From positions 1-64,000 of the IMG/VR virus record IMGVR_UViG_3300021959_006010: DNA of 64,000 nt. One strand, written 5' to 3'. The translations under genes and the position numbers were made by a program. Of the stretch, positions 1 through 17,858 are shown piece after piece. Every line of letters begins with the position of its first letter. The stretch's first letter is position 1. The notes under the pieces were generated by a model. It was not told where the DNA came from. It saw nothing but the letters and a program-made list of their open reading frames with translations, and searched no databases.

Positions 1-1
1 T

Positions 2-3000: not shown

Positions 3001-6000
3001 TAGAAGTAATAAAGATTCTAAGTCTTGGAATAATTTTAGAAAAGAATTGTCTATTGTTGATGTAAACAAAATTAAAAATGCATTCTTATATAATACAAAA
3101 ACAGGCAAGCTAGTAACATATCTTGATTACATTGACCCTGTACAAGGTAAAATTGCAGGCCCGGCAGAACAAGAGCTTTACTATAAAATGTTCTTAGATC
3201 CTGCACTTTATAACAATACTAGAATTGTAGGAATGTTTAGTGATACAAACAATTGGGGACAAGAACAAGTTGGACGTTTATGGTGGGATCTTAGCACTGT
3301 TAAGTTTACAGATGCCTATCAAGGTAATGCAATTTGGCAATCGAATAACTGGAATAGTTTAATTCCTGGAAAAAGCATAGACGTTTATGAATGGGTCGAA
3401 AGCGATATAACACCAGACGACTGGGATAGTATTGCTGATACTGATGAAGGAACACGCAGAGGAATAAGCGGCCAGACTAAATATGGCAATTCGGTATTTT
3501 CTCAAAGAATGGTGTATGATGATGTAGGTAAAAACTTTACAACTAAGTTCTATTTCTGGGTTAAAAATAAAAGAACAATTCCACAGTCAGAAAACAGACG
3601 TATTAGTGCAAGTGATGTTGCAAGTTTAATTCAAAACCCATCTGCATTAAATTATAAATTTGTTGCTCTTATGTCAGATAACAGATTTGTTATACATAAT
3701 TGTGACGATTTAATTAATGACAAAGACATTGCGTTAACTGTTGGTTACTATACTCAAGATAATCAAGAACAAAACAGCCATATAGAATATCAAATACTAT
3801 CCGAAGGATTGGAAACTAGTTTGCCAAAAGCTGAACTAGAAACAAAATGGATTGACAGTTTAGTAGGTTATGACTTACAAGGACGTCAAGTTCCAGATAT
3901 GGAATTGTCTCCAAGAAACAGATATGGTAATTTGTATCAACCTAGACAAGGCTGGTTTATTAACAGATTTGAAGCATTAAAACAAGTTATAGAACGTGCT
4001 AATATTAGTTTAACTAAGAAAATTGTAGTAGATGAATATAGCTTAGAAAAATTAAATGAAAAAGATCCGTTACCTTTAGCAACTGAAAGACGTTATGATG
4101 TTAAAATCGATACAGACGATCAACTACAATTTGTAGGTACAAGCCGATCAGTTACTGCGGAATTACGTGCAATTGTATCAGAAGGTAGAATTATTGATGT
4201 AAGTATCGAGAATCCAGGAAGAGGATACAAAGATCCGACTTATGTAGCTGGCGAGTCAACAAAACGACTTGGACCGAAAGTGACTATTATTGGTACTGGT
4301 ACTGATGCTGAAATTGAATTAGAAATTGATAACTTAGGAAAAGTAATTAACGTAACCGTTCTTAACGAAGGAAGCGGATACAACGACAACACAACTATTG
4401 TTGTAAGAAAGTTAAGCACTTTAGTAGAAGTTGACAACTCTATTCAAGGACGTTGGGCAATCTATCAATGGAACGCAGCTGACGAAAAGTGGGAAAGAAC
4501 AGTTACTCAAGACTATGATGTAACAAATTACTGGGATTATATCGACTGGTATGCAGAAGGATATAACCAATTTACATCGGTAGACTATCTAATAGATTAC
4601 AGCTACCAGTTATACGGATTAAATGACGAAATTGGAGATGTAGTTAAAATTAGTAGTGTAGGCACTGGCGGCTGGTTGTTATTAAGAAAAGTTAACAATA
4701 CAGGATCTAGAGATTATACTGTTGATTATGAAACAATTGGTAGAGAAAACGGAACTATTAAGATTAAGTCTACTCTATATGATTATGTCTTTAGTGAAAC
4801 AGGATTTGACAGCTTTATATACGATGGAAGATTTTATGATAACGAACCTACTATCGAAACACGAAGAATTTTGTCTGCACTAAAAGACGATATCTTTGTT
4901 GACGATCTTGCTAAAGATTATAATGAATTATTCTTTGCAAGTTTACGATACGTGTTTACTGAACAACCAAATGTTGATTGGGCATTTAAAACTAGCTTTA
5001 TCAAAGCAAAACACAATGTAGGAAACTTAGAACAAAAAACAACATACCAAAATGATAATTTAAACAGTTACAACGATTATATAAATGAAGTAAAACCGTT
5101 TAAAACTAAAATTAGAGAATATTTAAGTTCGTATGAGAACCTAGATAACACTAATAGTGTTGTTTCAGATTTTGACTTACCAGCAACTTATGATGAAGTT
5201 AAACAAGCAATCCTTCCAAAAAAATTGCGTGTTGTAAACAGCGAAATAATAGGAGAAGAAGGATTATTTGAAGATTATCCTGATAGAAACTGGTTAGAAA
5301 ATGTTGGATTTAAAGTAGTAGGCATCCATGTTAATGATCCAGGCAAAGGTTATTTAACTCCGCCTAAGGTTGAAATTACTGGAGGAGGCGGCTCTGGCGC
5401 AACTGCACAAGCTTATATAGGTAAAGGTACAGTAACTAAAGTTATTGTTACAAATCCTGGTAGCGGATATATCACTGCTCCTACAATAAGACTATTAAGT
5501 AATGTATCAGATACTGGAGTTGAAGCAAAACTTAGTGCCGAACTAGGCGAGACTGTTATAAGAAGTATGCATGTTGCAGTTAAGTTTGATAGAGTAACTG
5601 GTGATTACACTTATACAAGTTTGCCAGAAACAGAATCATTTACTGGAACTGCTGTAAATTCTGAATTTAAACTTAAATGGCCAATGGATCTAAGATCGAA
5701 CAAAATAAAAGTTTTAGTTGACGGAATTGAAATGTTGAGAAGCCAGTATAGTTATACTAATACTGTTAAAGACACAATTACTAATTCTTATGAAGATACG
5801 AACTGGAATTATGGCGGAGAAAATGTTGCTTCAGGTCCGGGAATAGAACTTATAAAAACAGGATACAGCCAAAAACAAGGTACTGTTACATTTACTGATC
5901 CTCCAGCATTAAATGCAACTATTGAAGTACAATACTACAAAGATTTATCACTACTTAATGCAAGTGATAGACTATACCATTTCTACAAGCCTACTGACGG

Positions 6001-8524
6001 AATGTTAGGAAACAGCACTGGCATACTAATGGAAGGTGTTGATTACGGCGGAGTTGAAGTACGCAGTTTTGATTTTGATGGACCGAGCGGTTGGGATACA
6101 GACGGTTGGTATTCTACAACTTGGGATACATACGACAATACTTACGAAGACGAAGTATTTTACTTAGACGGAACTTCGGTATCATTAGAATTATCAACAC
6201 CACTCGAAGATGGTATTGTTTATAATGTTTACAAAAATGGTGTAAGAATTGACGATCCTAATTTCGGAACTCAAGATCCTGTAACAAATCCAAATGCTGA
6301 AATGCCAAGTCTAACAGGCGACGGCACAACTGCTGTAGTAAACTTAGGTGACTACGGAGTAATAGCAGGAGAAGACGATGTAATAATTGTTCGTAAAATT
6401 ACATCTGATGGAAGTTTCCTACCAGATCCGTCAACATACGATACTTTACTTTCAGGTGGTGCTCTTGATTATTCAAATGCTAAAGGTACAGCCCCAGAAG
6501 ACATGATTGTAGATGGTGACGGCTTTGTTACTCCAACAACCAGCGGCGGTCCAGAAGAATTAATTCCTGGGCAAGTTCTTGACACTGTGGATATTAAAGT
6601 GTTTGAACGTGCCGGTGATGGTCAAGGAAATATCTATAACCAAAATTATATTTCAGATGGATCAAGAACAACATATCCTTTGGGAATTATTCCTGCTACT
6701 GACGACAGCGTTATTGTTAAAATTGCTGGATTGACTTTAGAAGATGATGAGTTTACAATAGATTATAAAAATTCTGAACTAACTTTAGTTAATACTCCTA
6801 CTATTTACGATCAAATAAACATTTTAAGTATCGGTGCTAGCGGACAAGACGTTTTAGATATAAATTCTTATATTTCTACAGAAGAAACGTTAGTTGTTGA
6901 AACAAGAGTACAATGGCAAGAATCATTATCATTCTTTATATCATTGGACGGCGAAACAATTGCAACAGCAGAACTTGAAGAAGATGCAAATGGATTAGTT
7001 TCGATTGTATTAGAAGAAGCAAACAAAATTATTGTTGGCACAGCAGTAAGTTATGGTGTATATGTAGATAATAGCATACAGCAATTTAGCTTAGTACAGA
7101 GTGATAGTTTTGTTGGCGACGGCAATACAACCGAGTTTGAACTTTCAACTCCGCCGATATATAAATCACCAACTCATCATTATACAGTAGTAAGGGTTGA
7201 TGATAAAATTTTATCAGCAGGATATAACAGACAGTTTACAGTGAGCGATCTAAGAGAATACGAACTAGATAAATTCCAATATCCGGTTGGCACATTGCAA
7301 GTTGAAGATGTAGAAGTTTATTTAAACGGTACTAAATTAGAAAATATTACACAATGGACATTAAACATCGGAAATAGCAGCGTACTATTAAGAGAAGCAG
7401 TAGGACAAACTGGTGACATACTTGAAGTGTATGTAATTACTGATGGTGATTATACTATTAGTGATAATGTAGTAGAACTAAAACAAACTCCTGCAAACGG
7501 TGTTGATATCGAAATTACACAGTTTAGTAACCACGATGCTATTGGATTAGAGCGTAGAACATGGGATATTGTTAATAGAACAAGTCTTACAGTCGGAAGT
7601 GACGAAGCTACTAGGTTCAATTTGTTAACGGGTGGTAAAATTAGTTTAGTAGCACCTGCAAAAGAAACTCAGTATGTATGGATAGCTAAAAATGGTGTAC
7701 TACTAACACCTAACGTTGATTACGGATTAGATAAAACAATGTCAATAGTAGAGCTTGTAAATAATCCGGCAGCCGGAGATGTTATAGAAGTAATACACTT
7801 TAGTGATGTAAGAGATACAGGAAGATTTGCTTGGAGACAATTTAAAGATATTCTAAACAGAACACATTACAAGCGCATAGATCGTACAACAAGACTTGCA
7901 AAAGATTTAAATGCATTTGATGTAAGGATTGAAGTAGAAGATGCTAGTGTTCTACCAGAGCCAGAAAAGAGTGCTAACCGTCCAGGTATTATTTGGATTG
8001 AAGGCGAGCGCATAGAGTACTTTATTAAAGATGGTAACTTACTAAGACAAATTCGCAGAGGTACATTAGGTACAGGTGTTAAAACAAGTATTGCATCAGG
8101 AACAGTTGTTTACGACCAAGGTTCGGATAATAACGTACCGTATAAAGACGAGTTGTTAACACAAGTTTACACTGCAACAGCAGAACAAGACACGTTTACA
8201 TTAGACTTTACACCTTCTAGCGTAAACGAGTTTGAAGTATTTGTTGCAGGAACTAGACTTCGTAAAAATGCTATAAGCCGTTTTGATTTAACTATAGATC
8301 AAGATAGTCCAGCAGCAGATGTAACTATTCCTGCAGAATTTACAATAAACGGAAATGATTTGGTTTTAGACACTTCAGTTTCAAATAATATTTTAGAAGG
8401 ACAAAAGGTTATGGTAATTAGAAAACTTGGCAGAACTTGGAAACAACCTGGTGTTTCCATAAGAGTAGACAATGGAACCATTGCAAAATTCTTACGTCAA
8501 GGGCAAACAAACTTACCTAAATAA
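2..8524 (+). CDS. Giant virion structural protein (baseplate/tail-associated), 5'-truncated by the window edge
   Basis: The frame of the 272..8524 ORF stays open back to base 2 (DRNDSFGKGITISNDGKYLAIGSPN...), so the true start lies outside the window. It has FG-GAP/beta-propeller-like repeats (FGESISINEDGTILAIGD, FGENVTL, FGETIL) and repeated NPGxGY..P.V.I.G.G motifs typical of myovirus baseplate proteins. It lies upstream of tail-fibre genes. Confidence 0.8.
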   Translation, partial: DRNDSFGKGITISNDGKYLAIGSPNASEIPTRLKGIFSESEGYITGDIVRYQENYWRARGVIQPVDFAIEVDTFNSYAFVKDQDANLDITLLLMGNPYVEQLTSHLLVRAPIDQYDGSKSTDSVVLEWNTYTNLNVNEDASEFTTPTTNIQPFDDYFADIKDTFISNTHVIQEKIDNILVVQNYSIVPVVGQTIVTSTGQAKLLDVYKDDSYLVMYTQGTDNYKTEVGTNGTLLETDDVYVDNTLIGTYTQPHQPSTGLLGGWWKINLGVTITNNAVDIFNQPYWNEPGYGLVFRDFKVAGDVSAVKYFYNIQDDIAQNAADGYGSLETSFIAALSYRGDPNDILGNYPSNKWVARMPVSNTYTINDTFELWVNNSSEGFDIETVNIPYSVTNTTQTITDIWDGYIDVRYDNFQTVDEDGDGIGDPFEPQIGDTIFVSLSGVDAEVVFYQKDGLNNARMYLKMIDPNPEVYATGATVVRKGDGITIPNRVMGNIVKSSLYSDKVGKLAVFENSSDFAIDEEFDGIYFEQFIAPNVEYWIYQQSLDIPGASRPASYPSSSNSEWTRVGSIAVDETGTEIGPNNQGKFSIYQRQDQKWQFVKEYIIPSSGENSYVGEKLKFAKDKDLYRLYVVENKPSGEQKIHFVLNGTDENGGVYDWDLAIDPNYRGEFVNTVFYKEGEYVIYNNAMYKSTTNLAAGAFNSALWTQIDSGINYTGSIPLPLNANSDIFYGADDYYAEYNQNNTTVDTIQFAYDFDTTNDGSVLTVSVDTAQNGDIDNRVLVYRLTGNNYKLSQVIESFASGTEFGESISINEDGTILAIGDSKNDTVTKDNGRVYIYKLSNNEFVLDQVLDSPVADEVERFGENVTLTNNSLYVSSYNGNMVTPTTFNVYSTLLGNQPQISTDDEGNPVYAKYIINPLSNVNENKTTFDNGFTTFKNKKIDTGAVNIFENYEDKFIYANNLKYPNSFASNFGETILANKNHVYVGMPRFKENTNGQIVEFRSNKDSKSWNNFRKELSIVDVNKIKNAFLYNTKTGKLVTYLDYIDPVQGKIAGPAEQELYYKMFLDPALYNNTRIVGMFSDTNNWGQEQVGRLWWDLSTVKFTDAYQGNAIWQSNNWNSLIPGKSIDVYEWVESDITPDDWDSIADTDEGTRRGISGQTKYGNSVFSQRMVYDDVGKNFTTKFYFWVKNKRTIPQSENRRISASDVASLIQNPSALNYKFVALMSDNRFVIHNCDDLINDKDIALTVGYYTQDNQEQNSHIEYQILSEGLETSLPKAELETKWIDSLVGYDLQGRQVPDMELSPRNRYGNLYQPRQGWFINRFEALKQVIERANISLTKKIVVDEYSLEKLNEKDPLPLATERRYDVKIDTDDQLQFVGTSRSVTAELRAIVSEGRIIDVSIENPGRGYKDPTYVAGESTKRLGPKVTIIGTGTDAEIELEIDNLGKVINVTVLNEGSGYNDNTTIVVRKLSTLVEVDNSIQGRWAIYQWNAADEKWERTVTQDYDVTNYWDYIDWYAEGYNQFTSVDYLIDYSYQLYGLNDEIGDVVKISSVGTGGWLLLRKVNNTGSRDYTVDYETIGRENGTIKIKSTLYDYVFSETGFDSFIYDGRFYDNEPTIETRRILSALKDDIFVDDLAKDYNELFFASLRYVFTEQPNVDWAFKTSFIKAKHNVGNLEQKTTYQNDNLNSYNDYINEVKPFKTKIREYLSSYENLDNTNSVVSDFDLPATYDEVKQAILPKKLRVVNSEIIGEEGLFEDYPDRNWLENVGFKVVGIHVNDPGKGYLTPPKVEITGGGGSGATAQAYIGKGTVTKVIVTNPGSGYITAPTIRLLSNVSDTGVEAKLSAELGETVIRSMHVAVKFDRVTGDYTYTSLPETESFTGTAVNSEFKLKWPMDLRSNKIKVLVDGIEMLRSQYSYTNTVKDTITNSYEDTNWNYGGENVASGPGIELIKTGYSQKQGTVTFTDPPALNATIEVQYYKDLSLLNASDRLYHFYKPTDGMLGNSTGILMEGVDYGGVEVRSFDFDGPSGWDTDGWYSTTWDTYDNTYEDEVFYLDGTSVSLELSTPLEDGIVYNVYKNGVRIDDPNFGTQDPVTNPNAEMPSLTGDGTTAVVNLGDYGVIAGEDDVIIVRKITSDGSFLPDPSTYDTLLSGGALDYSNAKGTAPEDMIVDGDGFVTPTTSGGPEELIPGQVLDTVDIKVFERAGDGQGNIYNQNYISDGSRTTYPLGIIPATDDSVIVKIAGLTLEDDEFTIDYKNSELTLVNTPTIYDQINILSIGASGQDVLDINSYISTEETLVVETRVQWQESLSFFISLDGETIATAELEEDANGLVSIVLEEANKIIVGTAVSYGVYVDNSIQQFSLVQSDSFVGDGNTTEFELSTPPIYKSPTHHYTVVRVDDKILSAGYNRQFTVSDLREYELDKFQYPVGTLQVEDVEVYLNGTKLENITQWTLNIGNSSVLLREAVGQTGDILEVYVITDGDYTISDNVVELKQTPANGVDIEITQFSNHDAIGLERRTWDIVNRTSLTVGSDEATRFNLLTGGKISLVAPAKETQYVWIAKNGVLLTPNVDYGLDKTMSIVELVNNPAAGDVIEVIHFSDVRDTGRFAWRQFKDILNRTHYKRIDRTTRLAKDLNAFDVRIEVEDASVLPEPEKSANRPGIIWIEGERIEYFIKDGNLLRQIRRGTLGTGVKTSIASGTVVYDQGSDNNVPYKDELLTQVYTATAEQDTFTLDFTPSSVNEFEVFVAGTRLRKNAISRFDLTIDQDSPAADVTIPAEFTINGNDLVLDTSVSNNILEGQKVMVIRKLGRTWKQPGVSIRVDNGTIAKFLRQGQTNLPK

Positions 8525-8528
8525 ATAC
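8521..8528 (+). promoter_or_regulatory. Putative T4-type late promoter (ATAAATAC)
   Basis: ATAAATAC lies just upstream of the 8539 ATG. The same octamer recurs at 13129 and on the minus strand at 59251-59258, and resembles the T4 late consensus TATAAATA. Confidence 0.55.
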
Positions 8529-8538
8529 ACTAGTAGAA

Positions 8539-9153
8539 ATGGAAAATAACATGATAAATGAACAAAATGGCGTATTTGTACAAGGACATATAAAAATACA
8601 TGATCCTACAACTGGTGAGGTTCTTATAAACAAAAAGAACGCAATCCATTACGAGAACATGAGTATTAGCTTGGCAGAAAGCCTTGGTAATGCCGGTCAA
8701 GGTTTTATTTACGAAATGAGCTTTGGTAACGGAGGCACAAACATTGATCCAACAGGTGTTATCACATACTTAACACCTAACTCAACTGGAACAAATGCTA
8801 GCCTTTATAATCAAACGTTTTCAAAAGTTGTAGATGATAGAAGTATTAGTAATTTAGATCCTAGTAGAAATAAAATAGAAACTAGACACGTAAGTGGAAC
8901 AAATTATACAGATATACTAGTAACATGCTTACTTGATTACGGAGAGCCCGAAGGTCAAGATGCTTTTGATACTGCAACCGATGACGATGCACTTTATGTA
9001 TTTGACGAATTAGGATTACGTAGTTATTCTTCCGATGGTTCAGGAAGATTACTTACACATGTTATTTTCCATCCTGTACAAAAATCGTTAAACAGATTGA
9101 TACAAATTGATTATACTGTGCGTGTTCAAAGTCTCTCAGGAGGTAACAACTAA
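8539..9153 (+). CDS. Virion structural protein (baseplate/tail module)
   Basis: 204-aa ORF between the giant structural gene and the tail fibres. Motifs KKNAIHYENMS, FDELGL and HPVQKSLNR..I.YTVR. TAATG-coupled to the next gene. Confidence 0.6.
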   Translation: MENNMINEQNGVFVQGHIKIHDPTTGEVLINKKNAIHYENMSISLAESLGNAGQGFIYEMSFGNGGTNIDPTGVITYLTPNSTGTNASLYNQTFSKVVDDRSISNLDPSRNKIETRHVSGTNYTDILVTCLLDYGEPEGQDAFDTATDDDALYVFDELGLRSYSSDGSGRLLTHVIFHPVQKSLNRLIQIDYTVRVQSLSGGNN

Positions 9154-11246
9154 TGCCATATGAAGTTGATTTTACAGACAGTGTTAATAAAGGTAAAATT
9201 ATTGTTCAAGATCGAACAATAAACGAAGAAACTAGTGTTAAGCTACCAGGAAGAAATACTACCAGTTACGGTGAAGTAATTGCTGAAAACTTCTTACACA
9301 TATTAGAGAACTTTGCAAGTGTTACACCTCCGGATAATCCAGTAGAAGGACAGCTTTGGTATGATACATCTAATGGTATAGAAAATCAGCTAAAAGTTTA
9401 TAACGGTACTGTTTGGGTTGCAAGCGGTGGTTTAAAGAAATCCACCGAAGCTCCTGACGTTTCAACTAGTGTTGAAGGAGATCTTTGGGTAGATACAGAC
9501 AATCAACAGCTTTATTTAAACTCAGGATCGGGATGGATTTTAGTCGGTCCAACATTTAGCGAAGGATTGTCAACTGGTCCTCGCAACACTACAATAACAG
9601 GTCAAGATGATGTAAACTATAAAGTTGTAATTATTGATATCGATGCTGTCCCTACAGTTATTATTAGCCATTCAAGCTTTACTCCAAAATCATCTATTAG
9701 CGGATTTAGCACTATAAAAAGTGGAATAAATTTAAGTAGTTTGTCTTTTGGCGGCAACTCTCTAAAGTATAATGGTGTAGCTGAAAAAGCTGAAGCATTA
9801 ATAGTACCTGGAGAAGCTGAACCTGTTGCTGCATCAAACTTCTTAAGAGGAAATGCAGTTAGTACAACAAGCTTTCCAATTAGAATTAAAAATAACGGCG
9901 GCGTACAAATAGGTTCAAATGCACAAACTGTACTAGAAAGTAGTGCGCAACAATCTGTACTTAAAAATAATGTAAGCGGTAGCGGACTAGATCTAAAAGT
10001 AATACAAAGTGACAATCCTGTAACTGCAATCAGAGTTAAAAGTAATGCAAATGATGCTCCGACAGTTGGTATTAATAAATTATTACCAGACGAAGCCTTA
10101 GATGTAGTAGGAAATATAAAAACCACAGGTAAAATATTTGTTAACAGCACAGAAGAATCAACCGACTTAGACGAGGGAAGCATTATTGCTGCTGGCGGAG
10201 CAGCAATTGCAAAAAGTCTTATAGTTGGACAAAACTTGTCAGTTGGTGGCGAATTAACTATTGGAGATATTACTCCTGATACTACAGGCAGAGAATTAGG
10301 AACATCGGACATACCATGGAATAGAGTTTATGCAACAAAGTTTGTAGGTAACTTAGAAGGAAGTGTTAGCGGAACAATCGAAGGCCGCGCAACAAGTGCA
10401 AACAAGTTAACTAGTGCAACAACATTTAACTTAGCAGGAGATGTTACAGCTAATAGTTTTACGTTTGACGGCCAAAGCGGCGGCTTAACAAAAACCTTTA
10501 CAACAGCAATTAGTAACTCATTTATTTCTACAAAACAATTAGAAAGAAGTCCAAAAGCTGAAGATGAATTACTGTTAAATAAAACTTCTGGAGATATAGG
10601 ACTTAAAAAGGTACTAGTAGAGGACTTGCTATTAGGAGTTCCAAGAATTCCAGCAGGTGCTATTACAATGTATGGCGGATCAAGTGCACCTGAAAATTGG
10701 TTGTTCTGTGACGGTGCTGAAGTTCTTAAGAGTGAGTTTCCTGACTTATGGGACGCAATTGGACATAGTTTTAAAGATCCGTCGTTGCTAGTAAACTCGA
10801 GTGCAACACACTTTGCATTACCTGATACACGAGGACGCTTTGCATTAGGTACAAACAATGGAGCAACATTATCGGATGATGATAGAGTTTATGGACCGTC
10901 TGTGCAAGATATAGGTATTTCGGGAGGTAAACAAGATGTTGATATTGCTGCTGAAAACCTACCAAACCACGAACACGATTTAAAAGACTCACAAAGTGTA
11001 CAGTACTATGCAATTACTGATAGTAACCAAACACAAACAAGTGCTGGTGAGGTAAAAGCACTTAACATATCAACAGGCGCTGCAAATACTAGTGGTATTC
11101 CGACAAGTGGCGGAGTACGTAACGGCGGCGTAACTGGAAATAATGACTGGAGAATAGATCCTAACACAGGAGACGAGCTAGGAAGCCGCTTAGATGTTGT
11201 AAACCCATTCTTAACAGTTAACTTTATCATATACACTGGGGGATAA
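9153..11246 (+). CDS. Tail fibre protein with tail-collar domain
   Basis: N-terminal module shared with the next two ORFs (YGE..ENF..LENFA...GQLWYDT). C-terminal collar motif PAGAITMYGGSSAPENWLFCDG...FALPDTRGRF, then NLPNHEH (HxH) and a terminal VNPFLTVNFIIY. Confidence 0.8.
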   Translation: MPYEVDFTDSVNKGKIIVQDRTINEETSVKLPGRNTTSYGEVIAENFLHILENFASVTPPDNPVEGQLWYDTSNGIENQLKVYNGTVWVASGGLKKSTEAPDVSTSVEGDLWVDTDNQQLYLNSGSGWILVGPTFSEGLSTGPRNTTITGQDDVNYKVVIIDIDAVPTVIISHSSFTPKSSISGFSTIKSGINLSSLSFGGNSLKYNGVAEKAEALIVPGEAEPVAASNFLRGNAVSTTSFPIRIKNNGGVQIGSNAQTVLESSAQQSVLKNNVSGSGLDLKVIQSDNPVTAIRVKSNANDAPTVGINKLLPDEALDVVGNIKTTGKIFVNSTEESTDLDEGSIIAAGGAAIAKSLIVGQNLSVGGELTIGDITPDTTGRELGTSDIPWNRVYATKFVGNLEGSVSGTIEGRATSANKLTSATTFNLAGDVTANSFTFDGQSGGLTKTFTTAISNSFISTKQLERSPKAEDELLLNKTSGDIGLKKVLVEDLLLGVPRIPAGAITMYGGSSAPENWLFCDGAEVLKSEFPDLWDAIGHSFKDPSLLVNSSATHFALPDTRGRFALGTNNGATLSDDDRVYGPSVQDIGISGGKQDVDIAAENLPNHEHDLKDSQSVQYYAITDSNQTQTSAGEVKALNISTGAANTSGIPTSGGVRNGGVTGNNDWRIDPNTGDELGSRLDVVNPFLTVNFIIYTGG

Positions 11247-11247
11247 A

Positions 11248-13125
11248 ATGAGTTATAGATTAAACAAGACAGACGGCACACTACTAATAGACTTAATAGA
11301 CGGGGTCATAGATACAGATAGTACAGATCTAACTCTTGTTGGTAAAAATTATACAGGATATGGTGAATCGTTTAATGAGAACTTTATTAAACTTTTAGAA
11401 AATTTTGCTAATCCAAACAGCCCAGTAAGTCCTTTGAGAGGACAACTTTGGTATGATACTAGTACTGCAAAATTAAAAGTCTTCAATGGCGAGTTATTTG
11501 AAACAGCAGCAGGTTCTTATGTTACAGATGAATTTCCTACAAACCCTAGTATAGGCGATACATGGTTAAAATTAAGTACTCAGCAGTATTATGTTTATAC
11601 AGGAAATTTAGATGATGCGTTTACTGAAGAAGCATCATCAGGATGGACGCTTATTGGTCCTGAATATACTTTGCTACAAAGAAGAACAGGATTTTTAACA
11701 GATAGTGTCCTTGATGAAACTAACCGTGCTAGAACTATAATGAGAATAGTTATCGGCGGAACTACAGTTGGTATAGTTTCTTCGTTGGAGTTTACTCCAA
11801 ACATTAACGAAAGAAGTAAAGTACAAGGATTAGTAACTGCCGGCAATCCAACTGGTAGAGTTTACAAAGGCTTTAATTTATATGAGCCAACAGAATTTGT
11901 TTACAGAGGAACAGCATCTCAAGCACTTGCATTAGAATCGTCAACAGGCGAAGAAATAACAGTTAACGATCTTGTAAGAAAAGACGGCGTTAATGAAACA
12001 ATGACAGGAAGTCTTGCTATTCGTAATAGTGCAGGTTTAACTATTGGTGCAAGTCAAAACTTAAAATTATTAATAGACAACGGAACAGTTTTACAGAATA
12101 CAAGACAAGACGAAGATTTCCGAATTAAAATTAACTCTAGCGCAAGCCAGTTGTCTGAAACAGAAGCATTTACTTTAAAAAGTGCAAGTCAAAGAATTGG
12201 TTTATTCCAAAGCAATCCTCAGTATACATTAGATGTTGCAGGTGACACTAGAATATCAGGAAATTTATTTGTTGAAGGCGATACTGTAAGCGTTGATGTT
12301 TCTACTTTGCACGTAGAAGATAAAAACATTGAACTAGGTCGTAATCAAGACGGAATAGTTTTTGACGATGCAGGAGCAAGCGGCGGCGGCATTACATTAA
12401 AGTCTACAGTTACAGATAAAACATTTAACTGGCTCAATACTACAGGTAGTTGGACAAGCTCAGAGCATATTGATCTAGCAGCCGGTAAAGATTATAAAAT
12501 AAACGGAACTACTGTTCTTTCTGCTAGCGAACTCGGATCAAGCGTAACGCAAGCACTAGGATTAACAAGAGTAGGAACTTTAACTGAACTTACAGTAGAT
12601 AATATTCAGATAAACAACAATGCAATTACTAGAATTAACGGTTCGGGCATTAGTATTGATGCAGGACTATCGCCTACTGTAGATTTCAATAATGCACGTT
12701 TACAAAATGTTGATACACCGACAGCAGATGCTGAAGGCGCAAATAAAGTTTATGTAGATCAAACTATACAAACTGAACCAATAGTGTTTAGTATGGACGT
12801 AACAGGATGGACTAATCCAGACATTGTAAACGCAGAACTAATTAATATTTTAAACACAACTTATCCGCCTAGTACTTTTGGTAACGGAAAAGAAGCTCGA
12901 ATTCCAATTTTTTGGTACAATACACAAACTGTTTCAGGTATAGATGTTGCAGGAAATACTACAACACCTACTACTTCTGTAATGAGTTTTCCTTCAGGAA
13001 CAGCAGTAACAGTTCTTCAAAGTGTTGGTTTACCTAATAATTTGTCAGCAACATTTGATCCAACAGTACAGCGTGATGTGAGAATTTTTGAGATTGCAAG
13101 TGGCGTATGGCAATTAAAGCCGTAA
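11248..13125 (+). CDS. Tail fibre-like virion protein
   Basis: Paralogous N-terminus (LVGKNYTGYGESFNENFIKLLENFA...GQLWYDT) and fibre-type segments (NPQYTLDVAG, LHVEDKNIELG, GGGITLK). Confidence 0.7.
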   Translation: MSYRLNKTDGTLLIDLIDGVIDTDSTDLTLVGKNYTGYGESFNENFIKLLENFANPNSPVSPLRGQLWYDTSTAKLKVFNGELFETAAGSYVTDEFPTNPSIGDTWLKLSTQQYYVYTGNLDDAFTEEASSGWTLIGPEYTLLQRRTGFLTDSVLDETNRARTIMRIVIGGTTVGIVSSLEFTPNINERSKVQGLVTAGNPTGRVYKGFNLYEPTEFVYRGTASQALALESSTGEEITVNDLVRKDGVNETMTGSLAIRNSAGLTIGASQNLKLLIDNGTVLQNTRQDEDFRIKINSSASQLSETEAFTLKSASQRIGLFQSNPQYTLDVAGDTRISGNLFVEGDTVSVDVSTLHVEDKNIELGRNQDGIVFDDAGASGGGITLKSTVTDKTFNWLNTTGSWTSSEHIDLAAGKDYKINGTTVLSASELGSSVTQALGLTRVGTLTELTVDNIQINNNAITRINGSGISIDAGLSPTVDFNNARLQNVDTPTADAEGANKVYVDQTIQTEPIVFSMDVTGWTNPDIVNAELINILNTTYPPSTFGNGKEARIPIFWYNTQTVSGIDVAGNTTTPTTSVMSFPSGTAVTVLQSVGLPNNLSATFDPTVQRDVRIFEIASGVWQLKP

Positions 13126-13128
13126 CAG

Positions 13129-13136
13129 ATAAATAC
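13129..13136 (+). promoter_or_regulatory. Putative T4-type late promoter (ATAAATAC)
   Basis: In the 40-bp gap before 13166, followed by an SD-like AGGGG. Confidence 0.55.
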
Positions 13137-13165
13137 ATTAAAGCATTTTAGGGGAATACTACGAG

Positions 13166-14653
13166 ATGGCTTATCAAATAGACAAGTATAATAAAGATTT
13201 CTTAACGTTAGTTGAGGACGGAACAATAGATCAAACAACTGATCTAAAATTTATCGGTAAAAACTATGCCGGTTACGGCGAAATACAAAATGAAAACTTT
13301 TTGTTTTTGCTAGAAAACTTTGCTGGAGCAAATCCTCCACCTAGAAAAATAGCAGGTCAAATATGGTTTGACACTAGCCAAAACAAGTTGAAGTTTTATG
13401 ACGGAACATATTGGAGAACCACTGGCGGTGCAGCAGTTAGTGCTACTGCACCAAGCGGGCTTACTGAAGGAGATTTTTGGTGGGACAGCGCCAACGATCA
13501 GTTATATGCGTGGGACGGAACAGAGTTTATATTAGTTGGTCCGCAAAATGCAGGAACTGGCCTAACGCAAATGCAAAGCCGTACAGTATTAGATACTTCT
13601 CAAAATGAGAGAACTATTATTGCCGCAGTAATTGAAGAAGAAGTAGTTTATATTATTTCCCCTGTAACATTTACAATTGATTCTTCAGATCCTGAAAATG
13701 CAATTGATGGTTTCTCGTATATTAGACAAGGACTAACACTAAAAAATACAACTAGTGAAGGTATTACTACTACAGATCACAGATATTGGGGCACTGCTGC
13801 AACAGCATCAGGGTTGCTAGACGGAACAGGAAACGTATACACAGCTGATGACTTTATAACTGGCGGCGAACTTGATCTTTCGTCAGGAAATGTACCAGCA
13901 AACTTCCCAAGCGAAGGTGTTACAATTGGTCCTGATAAATTATTTAAAATTTATTTAGATGCACAAAACAATGGTATTATTGAAAACGGTGCAACAACTA
14001 ACTCACAACTTTGGTTGAGCGTAGCAGATGCTAACCAACAAATTGTTACTCCGGTAAAAATTAACGAAACTAGTTTAATTCCCGGTGCTGATAATTCTTA
14101 TAACATCGGTTCAACAACATTACGTTGGTCAACAGTGTATGCTTCAAACTTTGAAGGCACAGCATCAAAAGCAGATAGCCTTTTAGTTGGTTCAACATAT
14201 AGAGTTGCTAGTGCAAGTAATGTAAATAACACTATTGTTGTTAGAGATGCTACCGGTAATATTGCTGCAAACGAATTCCAAGGTACTGCTTCGAGAGCAA
14301 AATTTGCAGACTTAGCAGAAAAGTATGCAACAGATCAAGAGTATCCTGTAGGAACAGTAATGGCAGTTGGTGGTGAAGCTGAAGCAAGAGCTGCAAAAGT
14401 AAGTGACTTTGCTATTGGAGTTATTTCAGACGCACCAGCATATATGATGAACTCAGAAGCGGAAGGGCAATACATCGGCTTAAAAGGTCGTGTTCCGGTT
14501 AGAGTTACAGGTCCTGTGTCTAAGGGTCAAGCAGTGTATGCTTGGCAGGACGGTATAGCATCAACTATAGCTTCAAATGGTTTAGTTGGAGTTGCGTTAG
14601 AAACTAACAACGACGAATCGGAAAAATTAGTTGAATGCGTGTTAAAAGTATAA
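13166..14653 (+). CDS. Tail fibre-like protein with C-terminal intramolecular-chaperone (peptidase G2-like) domain
   Basis: Paralogous N-terminus (FIGKNYAGYGEIQNENFLFLLENFA). The C-terminal ADLAEKY...GVISDAPAYMMN...IGLKGRVPVRV.G matches autocleaving chaperone domains of phage appendages. Confidence 0.7.
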   Translation: MAYQIDKYNKDFLTLVEDGTIDQTTDLKFIGKNYAGYGEIQNENFLFLLENFAGANPPPRKIAGQIWFDTSQNKLKFYDGTYWRTTGGAAVSATAPSGLTEGDFWWDSANDQLYAWDGTEFILVGPQNAGTGLTQMQSRTVLDTSQNERTIIAAVIEEEVVYIISPVTFTIDSSDPENAIDGFSYIRQGLTLKNTTSEGITTTDHRYWGTAATASGLLDGTGNVYTADDFITGGELDLSSGNVPANFPSEGVTIGPDKLFKIYLDAQNNGIIENGATTNSQLWLSVADANQQIVTPVKINETSLIPGADNSYNIGSTTLRWSTVYASNFEGTASKADSLLVGSTYRVASASNVNNTIVVRDATGNIAANEFQGTASRAKFADLAEKYATDQEYPVGTVMAVGGEAEARAAKVSDFAIGVISDAPAYMMNSEAEGQYIGLKGRVPVRVTGPVSKGQAVYAWQDGIASTIASNGLVGVALETNNDESEKLVECVLKV

Positions 14654-14664
14654 ATATATAAATA
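14649..14664 (+). promoter_or_regulatory. Tandem T4 late promoter consensus (TATAAATA x2)
   Basis: Exact TATAAATATATAAATA overlapping the 14653 stop codon, upstream of 14702. Confidence 0.6.
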
Positions 14665-14701
14665 ACATAAAGTACGTATATTAAACATAGGATGATAAAA
14701 C

Positions 14702-15775
14702 ATGGCAGTCGGTGATACAATTACAGCAGCTAGATACAATGCAATAAGAAATACTCTACGAACGGTATTAGGAACAAATAACACAGGTTCAGACGGATAT
14801 GGACAATACGTTGTTACTACTGCAAAAGCCGACAACGACATTGTTGATCACGTTGACATGTATAGACTATATGTTGATTTAGTAAGAGCTAGGACACACC
14901 AAACAGGTAATCCACCAACTTGGACAAACTCAGATGGATTAGCTGTTCCAACTACTGGTGATATTATTGGTGAGTTTGCTGGTGCAGTGGGTGCTAATCC
15001 AGGAGAGTCAAGTGCCGATGCAACAACTGATTTAGGTGAAGGATATGTTGATTACGAAAGTGCGCAAAGTAACATTTCCGCAGGCGCACAATTAGCAGAT
15101 TCGACACAAATGAGTATAGAAAGCTTAACGTCAAGTGCCCTTACTAACGCATCTTGGAACAATACAATTTCTCATGTAGTAACTATTACATTTGGCGGAT
15201 ATTCGACTACTAATCCTATTGATAGCAGCTCAGAAGCAGTTACTGGTGCAGACCATAGAAGATATTTCTTTAATGCTGGAGGAGAAATCCAGTTTGATGC
15301 TAGTTTAACAGGCGGCACATCAGGAACGTCTGGCACAAAGGACTATGATTGGTCTGTAATGTTATCAAACATGGGAACTATTACTTTTGGTGCAGGAACA
15401 ACAGGATCATCAACTGGATCAGGTACAGGTAGTAACTTGGGTAATTTTGATATGACAACATCTTACCAAACTGTTTATACTAAGACAGGTACCGGTAACT
15501 ATGCTGAAAACGACTACACTATTAGAGCTCGAGCTCCTAGCACAGATTCTTTACAATTTGAAATCACATTCAATGACGATGACACAGGTGACGAACCAAT
15601 TTCTCCACCACCAAGCGGCGGTATTGTAGGCGGTGTTGACGAAAACGTTACAGGATCAACTACTAGCAACGTTGGAATGCTAAGACCCGACGGCGACAAC
15701 CTTACAATTGGCTCATATACATATACAGCCGTTGTAGTTCCAGCACCAACTGCTGCAAATAATTCAAATCTTTAA
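14702..15775 (+). CDS. Virion structural protein (Gly/Thr/Ser-rich)
   Basis: 357-aa acidic, G/T/S-rich ORF (GDTITAARYN, GYGQ, RYFFNAGGEI) ending the structural module. Confidence 0.6.
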   Translation: MAVGDTITAARYNAIRNTLRTVLGTNNTGSDGYGQYVVTTAKADNDIVDHVDMYRLYVDLVRARTHQTGNPPTWTNSDGLAVPTTGDIIGEFAGAVGANPGESSADATTDLGEGYVDYESAQSNISAGAQLADSTQMSIESLTSSALTNASWNNTISHVVTITFGGYSTTNPIDSSSEAVTGADHRRYFFNAGGEIQFDASLTGGTSGTSGTKDYDWSVMLSNMGTITFGAGTTGSSTGSGTGSNLGNFDMTTSYQTVYTKTGTGNYAENDYTIRARAPSTDSLQFEITFNDDDTGDEPISPPPSGGIVGGVDENVTGSTTSNVGMLRPDGDNLTIGSYTYTAVVVPAPTAANNSNL

Positions 15776-15804
15776 TTGACAATACACTCCTATGGTTATA
15801 TAAT
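15776..15804 (+). promoter_or_regulatory. Consensus sigma70 promoter
   Basis: TTGACA (15776-15781), 17-nt spacer, TATAAT (15799-15804). SD AGGAG at 15817-15821. Confidence 0.85.
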
Positions 15805-15828
15805 AGTAGTAACTATAGGAGTATTTTT
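15786..15828 (+). terminator. 13-bp hairpin plus U-tract (terminator-like and RBS-occluding)
   Basis: ACTCCTATGGTTA (15786-15798) pairs with TAACTATAGGAGT (15810-15822) with one G-U pair, followed by ATTTTT. Confidence 0.6.
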
Positions 15829-16179
15829 ATGGACACAAAATTAGAAAAGGCTTTAGATTTTTCTAACTATATGGTTACACTTAATAACCAAAAAAGATTG
15901 ATACACGAACAATATTTGCAAGACTTAGTGCATTATTATAATGGTGGACAGTTTAGTGTAACTCAGCAATTAATAAGTTTTTGTCAAAGTCTTTGTGCAT
16001 TAGAGCAAGAAGACACAGTTCTAGTTGATGACAACAAACAACCTATTTTTGTAGAAGACTTGGAATCTTTTACAACTGATATTTTACATTTGTATGCAAA
16101 TGCTTCAAACTCTTATTTTTCAGAATATGACAAAATCCGTAAAAATAGAAGCGTTGAGGGCATTTTAAGTGATGACTAA
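15829..16179 (+). CDS. Hypothetical protein, first gene of the modification island
   Basis: 116-aa ORF with a strong SD directly after the sigma70 promoter. No recognisable motif. Confidence 0.75.
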   Translation: MDTKLEKALDFSNYMVTLNNQKRLIHEQYLQDLVHYYNGGQFSVTQQLISFCQSLCALEQEDTVLVDDNKQPIFVEDLESFTTDILHLYANASNSYFSEYDKIRKNRSVEGILSDD

Positions 16180-17029
16180 AGGCGTACTATTATTTGCTAG
16201 AAACAACAGTCAAGTTGATTATGTAAAGCAAGCATATTGGCTTGCTAAACGAGTAAGCAAGTATTTAAACTTGCCCACAACTTTAGTAACAGACGATGTT
16301 GGATATCTAGAATCAGCGTATCCTGATTACAATGATGTATTTGATAGTGTAGTTGCTCGCGAGTACACTACTAATTTTACATTAAAAAGGTATCATGACG
16401 GAACATTGGCTCAAAAACGTTTAGAATTTAAAAACGATACTAGGCCTTTAGCATATGATCTATCGCCTTACGACGAAACTCTTTTATTAGATACTGATGT
16501 TGTTATTGCAGACACAAACTTTTTAGAATGTTTTGAACAAAATAAAGATTTTTTAATATATAAAGATGCTTATGATTTAGCACAATATAGAGATTATAGC
16601 GAGTTTTGTTATATTTCAGATACAAGTGTAGACTTTTATTGGGCAACTTGTATATTTTTTAGAAAAACAGACGAAAATAAGATATTCTTTGACTTAGTTC
16701 AGCATATACAAGAAAATTGGCAACACTATAACAGTATTTTTCAAATAAACTCTTCTGTATATAGAAATGATCATGCTTTTAGTGTAGCAATACACATTAT
16801 GAATGGTTATCAAAGCGGAGATTTTGCAGGGAAAATGCCAGGAAAGCTTTTCTATACACTAGATAAAGACGAACTAGTTGAACTTAATGACAAAAACTTT
16901 ATGTTTCTTATAGAGAAAGAAAATCATTTAGGAGAATACACTGCTGTTAAGTTTAAACGAAACACAGTGCATGTAATGAATAAATTTAGTTTGAATAGAA
17001 TAATAGATAAGGAGTTAGCAGATGTCTAA
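16169..17029 (+). CDS. GT-A fold glycosyltransferase-like protein (GT8-like)
   Basis: SPYDETLLLDTD with a DxD motif, plus RNDHAFS and HVMNK. Paralogue of the next ORF. Confidence 0.65.
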   Translation: MMTKGVLLFARNNSQVDYVKQAYWLAKRVSKYLNLPTTLVTDDVGYLESAYPDYNDVFDSVVAREYTTNFTLKRYHDGTLAQKRLEFKNDTRPLAYDLSPYDETLLLDTDVVIADTNFLECFEQNKDFLIYKDAYDLAQYRDYSEFCYISDTSVDFYWATCIFFRKTDENKIFFDLVQHIQENWQHYNSIFQINSSVYRNDHAFSVAIHIMNGYQSGDFAGKMPGKLFYTLDKDELVELNDKNFMFLIEKENHLGEYTAVKFKRNTVHVMNKFSLNRIIDKELADV

Positions 17030-17858
17030 AGGCTTTGTAATGTTGGCTCAAAATTCTGAATACAACTATGTAGAACAAGCATGTTTAGCAGCAATGAGTT
17101 TGCATGCTACAAATACAGACTGTAAAATTTCTTTAATAACAAATGATGATGTTCCTAAAGAGTATATTTCTTTGTTTGACAAAATTATTGAAATACCTTG
17201 GACTGATCAAGCATCTGAGTCTGATTGGAAAGTTGAAAATAGATGGAAAATTTATCATGCTAGTCCGTATGATGAAACTATAGTTTTAGATACTGATGTT
17301 CTTGTATTACAAGATATTAGTAGTTGGTGGAAATTTCTTTCTAACTACGATTTGTATTTTACAAGCAAAGTCTACTCTTATAGAGACAAAGAAATAAACG
17401 ATACAACATATCGCAAAGCCTTTATAGCAAACAATCTTCCAAATTTGTATGTGGGATTCCATTACTTTAAAAAAGGAGAAAAGGCTCATCAGTTTTATAA
17501 AATGCTTGAACTAGTAATGAATAACTGGGAATTGTTTTACGGAACATATGTTAAGCATCATTATCCTAAACGCCCAAGTGTTGATGTTAGTGCAGCTATT
17601 GTAGCTAAAATTCTTGACTGTGACACAGAAGTTACTAATTCAATTGCTAAGTATCCAAGTTTTACACATATGAAGCCTGCTATTCAAGAATGGAAACATG
17701 TTCCGGACAAATGGCAAGAACGTGTTGGGACGTATCTTACAAAAGACTTAAAATTAGTAATAGGTAACCACCAACAAAAAGGTATCTTCCATTACACAGA
17801 AAAAGATTTTGTAACAGATGATATTTTAAATAGATATAAAGATTATATAGGAATTTAA
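17022..17858 (+). CDS. GT-A fold glycosyltransferase-like protein (GT8-like)
   Basis: SPYDETIVLDTD DxD motif, FTHMK and FHYTEK. SD AAGGAG upstream. Confidence 0.65.
   Translation: MSKGFVMLAQNSEYNYVEQACLAAMSLHATNTDCKISLITNDDVPKEYISLFDKIIEIPWTDQASESDWKVENRWKIYHASPYDETIVLDTDVLVLQDISSWWKFLSNYDLYFTSKVYSYRDKEINDTTYRKAFIANNLPNLYVGFHYFKKGEKAHQFYKMLELVMNNWELFYGTYVKHHYPKRPSVDVSAAIVAKILDCDTEVTNSIAKYPSFTHMKPAIQEWKHVPDKWQERVGTYLTKDLKLVIGNHQQKGIFHYTEKDFVTDDILNRYKDYIGI

What the first reader, a model, noticed from the sequence alone, without database searches (positions are those of the whole stretch)
15776..15831. Three-in-one switch at the structural/biosynthetic boundary: promoter inside a hairpin that hides the RBS and resembles a terminator
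Seen: a perfect TTGACA-17-TATAAT promoter whose spacer (15786-15798) is the 5' arm of a 13-bp stem. The -10 box lies in the loop, the 3' arm (15810-15822) contains the AGGAG SD of the 15829 gene, and a U-run follows. The expected +1 (~15810-15811) falls at the start of the 3' arm. Established: T4 genes e, soc and I-TevI are silenced in read-through transcripts by RBS-sequestering hairpins and freed by a promoter inside the hairpin. Inference: the same logic with reversed timing. Read-through from late tail genes is terminated or muted, while sigma70 transcripts are translated.
Basis: partly seen in the sequence, partly recalled or inferred. Interest (0 to 1): 0.66.

Follow-up and report, generated by a model that had tools for sequence, protein, structure and literature searches.

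The report
Promoter inside an RBS-hiding hairpin
A marine jumbo phage has a perfect host-type promoter sitting inside an RNA hairpin that should hide the next gene's ribosome-binding site only in transcripts arriving from the upstream tail genes. This is the phage T4 and IS10 trick with a different promoter class; the case rests on sequence analysis only and is not shown experimentally.

Summary
TTGACA (15776-81), a 17-nt spacer and TATAAT (15799-804) sit inside a 14-bp stem (15786-99 / 15809-22, -17.8 kcal/mol, z -3.6). The stem pairs the whole AGGAG SD, is followed by A+U5 and ATG 15829, and the predicted +1 (~15811) lies in the 3' arm.

The promoter is real: it is conserved at a fixed distance in all 71 distinct orthologous loci. 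The hairpin is not universal. It is strong in about 18 of 71 loci and pairs the SD in 14 of 71, scattered over the tree with different arm sequences. Where present it behaves as a sense-strand RNA structure:
- two compensatory pairs in the closest clade;
- 15 G.U against 2 A.C mismatches;
- the sense strand folds better than the antisense.

The same design recurs at six or more other sigma70-type promoters of this 275-kb genome, and it is specific to promoter-bearing junctions (6 of 36 against 1 of 123). The upstream genes carry a second, T4-late-like promoter motif that precedes virion genes.

There are no RNA data. Termination and timing remain inferred. I file it as a new member of a known kind (T4 e/soc/49/I-TevI; IS10/IS50 fold-back inhibition).

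The parts
13128..13135 (+). T4-late-like promoter motif GATAAATA, 38 nt before the tail-fibre gene 13166-14653
   Evidence: the gene matches tail-fibre PHROGs and Peptidase_G2
14649..14664 (+). Two tandem [GT]ATAAATA motifs, 45-53 nt before ORF 14702. Likely late promoter and source of read-through into the element
   Evidence: motif class: 34 of 48 copies lie within 80 nt upstream of a co-directional start (4.9% expected)
14702..15775 (+). Upstream ORF (357 aa, no family match), last of a co-directional run of tail-fibre-like genes. Its stop abuts the -35
15776..15781 (+). -35 hexamer TTGACA
   Evidence: TTGAC[A/T/G] in all 71 orthologous regions
15786..15799 (+). 5' arm of the hairpin (contains the anti-SD ACUCCU). 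It lies in the promoter spacer and is therefore absent from promoter-initiated RNA
15799..15804 (+). -10 hexamer TATAAT, in the loop of the hairpin
15811..15811 (+). Predicted transcription start (rule of thumb; not mapped)
   Evidence: inference from -10 position; leaders of 12-21 nt in all relatives
15809..15822 (+). 3' arm of the hairpin, contains the Shine-Dalgarno AGGAG (15817-15821)
15823..15828 (+). A + U5 tract between stem and start codon. Terminator-like tail that doubles as the SD-AUG spacer
15829..16179 (+). 116-aa gene, first of a conserved 116/286/278-aa gene set. Its fold resembles DUF4376 (tail-fibre chaperone) domains

Best explanation
The element is a compact insulator between two transcription units of an uncultured estuarine/marine jumbo phage.

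Read-through RNA. Transcripts that start upstream, most likely at the T4-late-like motifs before the tail-fibre genes, contain both arms. They fold a 14-bp hairpin that buries the whole Shine-Dalgarno of gene 15829. These RNAs are therefore poorly translated for that gene. Because the GC-rich SD/anti-SD base of the stem is followed by A+U5, some of them probably also terminate there.

Promoter-initiated RNA. Host sigma70-type RNA polymerase starting at the embedded consensus promoter begins at about 15811, inside the 3' arm. The RNA lacks the 5' arm and has an 18-nt, almost unstructured leader, so it is translated.

What is shown: the anatomy, the conservation of the promoter, the RNA-type signatures of the stem, and its recurrence in this genome.
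What is inferred: the transcription start, the existence of read-through, the size of the translational effect, termination, and early-versus-late timing.
For: Hairpin anatomy and energetics:
- -17.8 kcal/mol, z -3.56.
- It persists in 120-230-nt read-through contexts. Opening the SD-to-start region costs 15.8 against 4.5 kcal/mol.

Promoter:
- Conserved at a fixed distance in all 71 distinct orthologous regions.
- 12 perfect promoters in the genome against about 0.5 expected.

Signs that the stem is a sense-strand RNA structure:
- In the homologous clade (window, L002, L003, L055, L087), 94% of cells are paired against 30-56% when the partners are slid. There are 2 compensatory pairs and 3 one-sided G.U/G-C changes.
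- L004, L100, L089 and others have non-homologous arms in the same architecture.
- Sense folds better than antisense: -8.2 against -5.9 kcal/mol, p 1.5e-8.
- With symmetric scoring there are 15 G.U against 2 A.C mismatches, p 0.001.

Recurrence in the same genome:
- A promoter segment pairs with its own leader better than with other promoters' leaders (-12.1 against -9.3, permutation p 5e-5).
- Clear siblings lie at genome positions 185708(-), 115415(-), 191802(-), 65276(-), 228365(+) and 75904(-), all directly behind a co-directional gene.
- Initiation regions behind sigma70-type promoters are far more complementary to their upstream 40 nt than those of other SD-bearing genes (at or below -14 kcal/mol in 6 of 36 against 1 of 123, p 6e-4).
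- The arms differ between siblings apart from the SD/anti-SD.

Upstream promoter class:
- The upstream genes carry the [GT]ATAAATA class, which precedes tail-tube, baseplate and virion genes.
- No near-consensus sigma70 promoter lies in 1-15775, while several lie downstream.

Precedent: T4 e, soc, 49 and I-TevI (PMC3014915).
Against: - No transcript data of any kind: no RNA run holds the phage, so +1, read-through and 3' ends are predictions.
- The hairpin is missing or weak in most orthologous loci (z above -2 in 41 of 71; SD-sequestering in only 14 of 71), so it cannot be essential to the unit.
- Averaged over the family, the SD is only slightly less accessible than with shuffled upstream sequence (0.27 against 0.33).
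- Covariation in the homologous clade rests on 5 sequences. The two compensatory pairs are adjacent, both in the window lineage, and could be one event (shuffle control 58/500).
- The promoter-initiated leader can itself form a weak -3.9 kcal/mol hairpin touching the SD and AUG.
- If the 116-aa protein is a tail-fibre chaperone, silencing it in late fibre transcripts is not the obvious logic.
- As a terminator, the loop (9-11 nt) is longer than usual and the stem is A-U rich (one search did not call it).
Confidence: 0.58

Rival explanations
1. It is simply the intrinsic terminator of the tail-fibre transcription unit. Genome compaction (a 53-nt intergenic space exactly filled by promoter plus leader) forced it to overlap the next promoter. 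The SD/anti-SD pair is used only because it is the one GC-rich block available. Translational masking would then be a by-product with no selected role.
For: - Stem followed by A+U5.
- T-runs of 5 or more between SD and ATG occur in 6 of 14 SD-pairing hairpins against 1 of 57 other orthologues.
- Of the five terminator-like elements found near the 36 strong promoters, three are embedded in the promoter: 15776, 185708, 75904.
- The -35 starts one base after the stop codon.
Against: - Several siblings and orthologues pair the SD without any U-run: 115415, 191802, 65276, 228365, L004, L089, L094.
- The U-run association comes from about two lineages.
- The loop is 9-11 nt and the stem is A-U rich (one search did not call it).
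- Most promoter junctions in this genome have no terminator at all, so termination between units is not generally required.
Confidence: 0.2
2. The inverted repeat is a DNA operator. A dimeric phage or host regulator binds the two arms flanking the -10 and shuts the promoter off later in infection.
For: The inverted repeat is centred on the -10/+1 region, and inverted repeats around the -10 are seen in many orthologues.
Against: - Arm sequences, arm lengths and register differ between orthologues and between siblings in the same genome. Only the SD/anti-SD is shared.
- Mismatches are strongly biased to sense-strand G.U (15 against 2) and the sense strand folds better than the antisense. A DNA-binding palindrome does not predict either.
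Confidence: 0.05
3. The hairpin has no function here. It is a chance or hitch-hiking palindrome next to a real promoter.
For: It is absent from most orthologous loci, and A+T-rich intergenic DNA forms many weak stems.
Against: - z -3.56 with none of 200 shuffles folding as well.
- Complementarity is maintained through compensatory changes in the closest clade.
- Independent non-homologous versions exist at the same place.
- It is enriched at promoter junctions genome-wide.
Confidence: 0.12

Closest known systems
Phage T4 genes e, soc, 49 and I-TevI (and mobE of Aeh1): RBS-sequestering hairpins with a promoter inside (review PMC3014915)
   Same: The SD and/or AUG is buried in a helix in transcripts coming from upstream. 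An internal promoter starts transcription within the structure, so its RNA lacks the 5' strand and is translated. As with T4 gene e, the structure is present in some relatives and absent in others.
   Different: The embedded promoter here is a consensus sigma70-type -35/-10 promoter, not a gp55-dependent TATAAATA late promoter. Here the TATAAATA-like motifs lie upstream, so the inferred temporal direction is reversed (late RNA masked). A U-tract follows the stem. The phage shows no T4 hallmark families (no Gp23 or gp45 Pfam match). Nothing has been tested experimentally.
IS10/Tn10 and IS50/Tn5 'fold-back inhibition' of read-through transcripts (Davis, Simons & Kleckner 1985, Cell 43:379, reference seen; mechanism details from my own knowledge)
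   Same: A sigma70 promoter is embedded so that only externally initiated transcripts contain the upstream strand that pairs with the ribosome-binding site. This protects a gene from expression by outside transcription.
   Different: Those are transposase genes of insertion sequences shielded from fortuitous host promoters. Here it is an internal operon boundary in a phage, it recurs at several promoters of one genome, and it is probably tied to a temporal programme.
Rho-independent (intrinsic) terminators
   Same: A stable stem whose GC-rich base is followed within one base by a U-rich tract (U5 of AUUUUUAU). It sits at the end of a gene run.
   Different: The loop is 9-11 nt because it houses the -10 box, and the stem has only 4 G-C pairs. 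The U-tract is also the SD-AUG spacer. The element overlaps a promoter and an RBS. Several otherwise equivalent siblings lack the U-tract.

Membership tests
T4-type promoter-in-hairpin translational masking | SD and/or start codon paired in a stable helix in the longer transcript | tested here: met
   All 5 SD bases are paired, -17.8 kcal/mol, and the helix persists in 120-230-nt contexts. This is prediction only.
T4-type promoter-in-hairpin translational masking | An internal promoter whose start lies within or after the 5' strand of the helix | tested here: met
   The consensus promoter places +1 at about 15811, in the 3' arm. The promoter is conserved in 71 of 71 orthologues. The start itself is not mapped.
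T4-type promoter-in-hairpin translational masking | Read-through transcripts from upstream actually exist and are poorly translated | not testable with these tools
   No RNA run holds the phage. Upstream genes are co-directional and have their own promoter motif.
T4-type promoter-in-hairpin translational masking | The embedded promoter is a T4 late promoter (TATAAATA, gp55-dependent) | tested here: not met
   The embedded promoter is TTGACA-17-TATAAT. TATAAATA-like motifs lie upstream instead.
IS10/IS50 fold-back inhibition | Sigma70 promoter embedded so that only outside transcripts carry the RBS-pairing strand | tested here: met
   (in silico)
IS10/IS50 fold-back inhibition | The gene protected is a transposase at the end of a mobile element | tested here: not met
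   The gene is a conserved 116-aa phage protein in a syntenic phage operon.
Intrinsic terminator | GC-rich stem with a short (3-8 nt) loop | tested here: not met
The consensus scan did not call it. My looser scan did.
Intrinsic terminator | U-tract directly after the stem | tested here: met
   A+U5 after the last pair. It is conserved in the homologous clade.
Intrinsic terminator | RNA 3' ends form at the U-tract | not testable with these tools
   No RNA data.
Protein operator palindrome | Half-site sequence conserved between sites and orthologues, with no strand bias in mismatches | tested here: not met
   The arms vary and only the SD/anti-SD is shared. G.U against A.C is 15:2.

The most novel reading that the evidence does not exclude
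In a widespread lineage of uncultured marine/estuarine jumbo phages, strong host-type promoters are repeatedly built into hairpins that make RNA arriving from upstream late (TATAAATA-type) units both untranslatable and partly terminated. This would be a three-in-one terminator/promoter/RBS-mask module giving temporal insulation in the opposite direction to T4. It would have evolved repeatedly at the same junction and be used at several junctions of one genome.
Probability: 0.3. Interest if true: 0.6.

Novelty: new member of a known kind. Interest (0 to 1): 0.42.

Why it matters
If confirmed, the 'promoter inside an RBS-masking hairpin' logic would not be a peculiarity of T4 late genes and insertion sequences. 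It would be a general, repeatedly evolved way for densely packed phage genomes to keep neighbouring transcription units apart, here with a sigma70-type promoter and apparently protecting a non-late unit from late read-through.

In practice it gives two things:
- a rule for annotating transcription-unit boundaries in uncultured jumbo phages, which have two promoter classes and embedded hairpins;
- a very compact (53-nt) natural part combining promoter, RBS mask and possible terminator, which could be tested directly in reporters without culturing the phage.

Tried and rejected
- Megablast of 14700-17100 against phage records: no match.
- tblastn of the 116-aa protein: only Ralstonia phage RsoM2USA (36% identity). 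Its orthologous junction keeps the gene order but has no sigma70 consensus promoter. It has a different hairpin that does not include the SD, so it gives no covariation.
- Sequencing runs: 8 DNA holders (estuary, marine, sediment) and no RNA.
- Laying contigs of four runs on 15400-16300 gave only fragmentary pieces and no variants across 15776-15828.
- Rfam: no family in 15300-16300.
- Pfam families for sigma70 region 2, multisubunit RNAP, T7-type RNAP, the gp45 clamp and Gp23 capsid: none in the 275-kb record, which is 77% complete. For two of them the controls did not ring either, so absence is not shown. The factor that reads [GT]ATAAATA is therefore unidentified.
- Pfam and PHROGs on the 116-aa protein and 8 relatives: nothing significant.
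- Foldseek against PDB: nothing with E below 0.1 (best 0.25); prefoldin-like hits are weak.
- The protein-atlas search: machine busy.
- The 357-aa upstream protein is not a paralogue of the neighbouring tail fibres.
- Pair-by-pair covariation across all relatives was rejected, because hairpins in different clades differ in register. Only the five-sequence homologous clade could be counted.
- RNase III site: considered and set aside, because the stem is only 14 bp (my own knowledge of the usual requirement of about 20 bp).
- A role on the minus strand: rejected. All genes from 272 to 58397 are on the plus strand and no T-run follows the stem on the minus strand.

Full report
**1. What is there**

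The window is the first 64 kb of a 275,366-bp IMG/VR virus record (77% complete). The same phage lies on a 346.7-kb metagenome contig (L023). Holders of the DNA are estuary, marine and sediment metagenomes.

- -35 TTGACA at 15776-81, beginning one base after the TAA stop of ORF 14702-15775;
- a 17-nt spacer;
- -10 TATAAT at 15799-804;
- a stem of 15786-15799 with 15809-15822;
- AGGAG at 15817-21;
- A+U5 at 15823-28;
- ATG at 15829.

RNAfold gives a 14-bp stem with a 9-nt loop at -17.8 kcal/mol. That compares with -9.6 +/- 2.3 for dinucleotide shuffles (z -3.56, none of 200 as good). The 53-nt intergenic space is filled exactly by promoter plus an 18-nt leader.

**2. The promoter is real**

The genome holds 76 near-consensus (11 or 12 of 12) sigma70-type promoters. 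Twelve are perfect, against about 0.5 expected. They include a dense array of small genes at 219-231 kb that looks like an early region. None lies in 1-15775, but several lie in the downstream block (15776, 26164, 40168, 46957, 54058).

Searches with the 116-aa product of gene 15829 gave 14 viral and 80 metagenomic loci; 389 relatives exist. In all 71 distinct upstream regions there is a TTGAC[A/T/G], 16-18 nt, TAnnnT promoter. It sits at a fixed distance from the start codon, with leaders of 12-21 nt.

The gene is always followed by homologues of the 286- and 278-aa genes (68 and 67 of 70). The gene upstream is much more variable. The promoter therefore marks the start of a conserved unit.

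**3. The hairpin is optional but behaves like a selected sense-strand RNA structure**

Among the 71 regions, the segment from the end of the -35 hexamer to three bases past the ATG has z below -3 in 18 and below -2 in 30. In 14 regions, at least 4 SD bases pair with sequence upstream of the predicted start. These 14 are scattered over the protein tree.

The closest clade (window, L002, L003, L055, L087) shares a homologous stem:
- 94% of cells are paired, against 30-56% when partners are slid;
- 9 pairs are invariant;
- 3 pairs show one-sided changes such as G.U to G-C;
- 2 pairs are compensatory (G-C to A-U, U-A to C-G).

Both compensatory pairs are adjacent and both lie in the window lineage. 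With five sequences the shuffle control is weak (58/500).

Other lineages (L004/L031, L100, L089/L102, L026, L028, L094) have different arm sequences and registers but the same architecture.

Two strand tests argue for RNA and against a DNA or protein palindrome:
- The sense strand folds better than the antisense (-8.2 against -5.9 kcal/mol, p 1.5e-8).
- When inverted repeats are found with a scoring that treats both transition mismatches alike, 15 are G.U in the sense strand and 2 are A.C (p 0.001). These counts are not phylogenetically independent.

Averaged over the family, SD accessibility in read-through RNA is only slightly lower than with shuffled upstream sequence (0.27 against 0.33, p 0.008; 13 of 71 individually significant).

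**4. The design recurs in this genome**

For 36 strong promoters with a gene within 60 nt, the promoter segment pairs with its own leader better than with other leaders (-12.1 against -9.3 kcal/mol; permutation p 5e-5).

Clear siblings have an anti-SD arm inside the promoter and an SD (or start-codon) arm in the leader. In genome coordinates they are:
- 185708(-), followed by U6;
- 115415(-);
- 191802(-);
- 65276(-);
- 228365(+).

At 75904(-), a hairpin over the -10 and +1 is followed by U6. All of these sit directly behind a co-directional gene. Their arms share only the SD/anti-SD.

Translation-initiation regions behind sigma70-type promoters are far more complementary to the preceding 40 nt than those of the other 123 SD-bearing genes. 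The means are -10.2 against -6.9 (p 9e-6). Values at or below -14 kcal/mol occur in 6 of 36 against 1 of 123 (p 6e-4).

One sibling (191802) separates an endolysin/peptidase-like gene from a deoxyribonucleotidase-like gene.

**5. What reads in from upstream**

A second motif class, [GT]ATAAATA, occurs 48 times. Thirty-four copies lie within 80 nt upstream of a co-directional start (4.9% expected), typically 30-45 nt away. It precedes the tail-fibre gene 13166 and, in tandem at 14649-14664, ORF 14702.

Elsewhere it precedes a tail-tube gene, a baseplate/fibre-connector gene and virion structural genes. Five of the six downstream genes that have a functional annotation are virion genes.

In sequence it matches the T4 late promoter. 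However, no T4-type clamp, capsid, sigma or phage RNAP family was found in the incomplete record, so the factor is unknown.

'Late' and 'early' remain inferences.

**6. Mechanism**

In read-through contexts of 120-230 nt the hairpin persists. Making 15815-15833 single-stranded costs 15.8 kcal/mol there, against 4.5 kcal/mol in RNA starting at 15811. The short RNA forms only a weak -3.9 kcal/mol stem.

By the usual thermodynamic models of initiation (my own knowledge), an 11 kcal/mol difference means a reduction of around two orders of magnitude. That is the order of the 100-fold effect reported for T4 gene e (PMC3014915).

Termination is plausible. The GC-rich SD/anti-SD base is followed by A+U5. 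T-runs of 5 or more accompany 6 of 14 SD-pairing hairpins against 1 of 57 others. Three of the five terminator-like elements near strong promoters are embedded ones.

But the association comes from about two lineages. The loop is long, and several siblings and orthologues have no U-run. I therefore rank SD masking as the common denominator and termination as a likely extra in this copy.

**7. Context and caveat**

Upstream lie tail-fibre-like genes: a Collar domain, a Peptidase_G2 intramolecular-chaperone domain and tail-fibre PHROGs.

Downstream, after five genes with no informative family match, comes a long cluster with at least nine radical-SAM, SPASM or B12-binding enzymes plus sugar epimerase and dehydrogenase genes.

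The 116-aa protein folds confidently (pLDDT 88) as helix, beta-hairpin, helix, beta-hairpin, helix. Among viral models it resembles DUF4376-domain proteins (E 3e-3 to 1e-2; TM 0.44-0.64). The best hit is an uncharacterised protein at E 3e-6.

DUF4376 is the C-terminal domain of the Alteromonas phage V22 tail-fibre chaperone, which is encoded just downstream of its fibre (PMC7289586, PMC10579305). There is no sequence-level support. The gene is also more conserved than its upstream neighbour.

So this is only a lead. If true, the functional boundary lies beyond this gene, and the reason for masking it in late RNA would need rethinking, for example decoupling chaperone dosage from the fibre.

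**8. Comparison and verdict**

The logic is that of T4 e, soc, 49 and I-TevI. With a sigma70 promoter, it is also that of IS10/IS50 fold-back inhibition (reference seen; details from my own knowledge).

It fails the T4 membership feature 'embedded late promoter' and the IS feature 'transposase of a mobile element'. It works like both but belongs to neither set.

I rate it a new member of a known kind. It is unproven at the RNA level and not conserved enough to be a core feature.

Best explanation 0.58; interest 0.42.

Noticed in passing
window 19402-40183: A long co-directional cluster in a jumbo phage. It has at least nine radical-SAM enzymes (several with SPASM or B12-binding domains), an NAD-dependent sugar epimerase/dehydratase, a UDP-glucose/GDP-mannose dehydrogenase and a GDSL-like hydrolase. 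Its product is unknown (glycan, cofactor or peptide modification?).
   Followed up: partly
genome-wide; in the window at 13128, 14649, 14657, 57678 (+) and 59259 (-): A second promoter-like class, [GT]ATAAATA (T4-late-like). There are 48 copies, and 34 lie 8-80 nt (mostly 30-45) upstream of co-directional starts, mostly virion genes. No gp55-, gp45- or Gp23-type family was detected in the record.
   Followed up: partly
genome 219400-231000 (outside the window), + strand: A dense array of about 20 near-identical promoter modules (A-tract, TTGACA, 17 nt, TATAGT or TATACT, then an AGAGGGC-type SD). Each precedes a small ORF, so this looks like a typical early region. Several also have spacer-to-leader pairing.
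   Followed up: partly
window 2-8524: A giant ORF of at least 2840 aa, open at the 5' end of the record, upstream of the tail-fibre genes. Not analysed.
   Followed up: no
window 15829-17858; L113 (Ralstonia phage RsoM2USA) 1237-5109: The 116/286/278-aa gene set is conserved in at least 67 of 70 marine relatives. Gene order and gene sizes are similar in soil phage RsoM2USA (343.8 kb). The 116-aa protein has a prefoldin-like or DUF4376-like fold.
   Followed up: partly
genome 65276-65216 (-), just outside the window: A perfect sigma70-type promoter whose -10 is directly overlapped by TATAAATA. This looks like a tandem early-plus-late promoter in front of one gene, inside an SD-pairing hairpin.
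   Followed up: no
genome about 157620-157715 and about 158890-159005 (outside the window): Two intergenic stretches look like tRNA genes by eye (acceptor and T-arm-like sequences). They were not scanned with ARAGORN.
   Followed up: no
genome 69541, 153567, 184602, 209181, 229168 (outside the window): Other hairpins overlap or abut the -35 box of strong promoters. Some are canonical GC-rich terminators directly followed by TTGACA, and some have the -35 in the loop. Overlap of hairpins and promoters appears to be a general habit of this genome.
   Followed up: no
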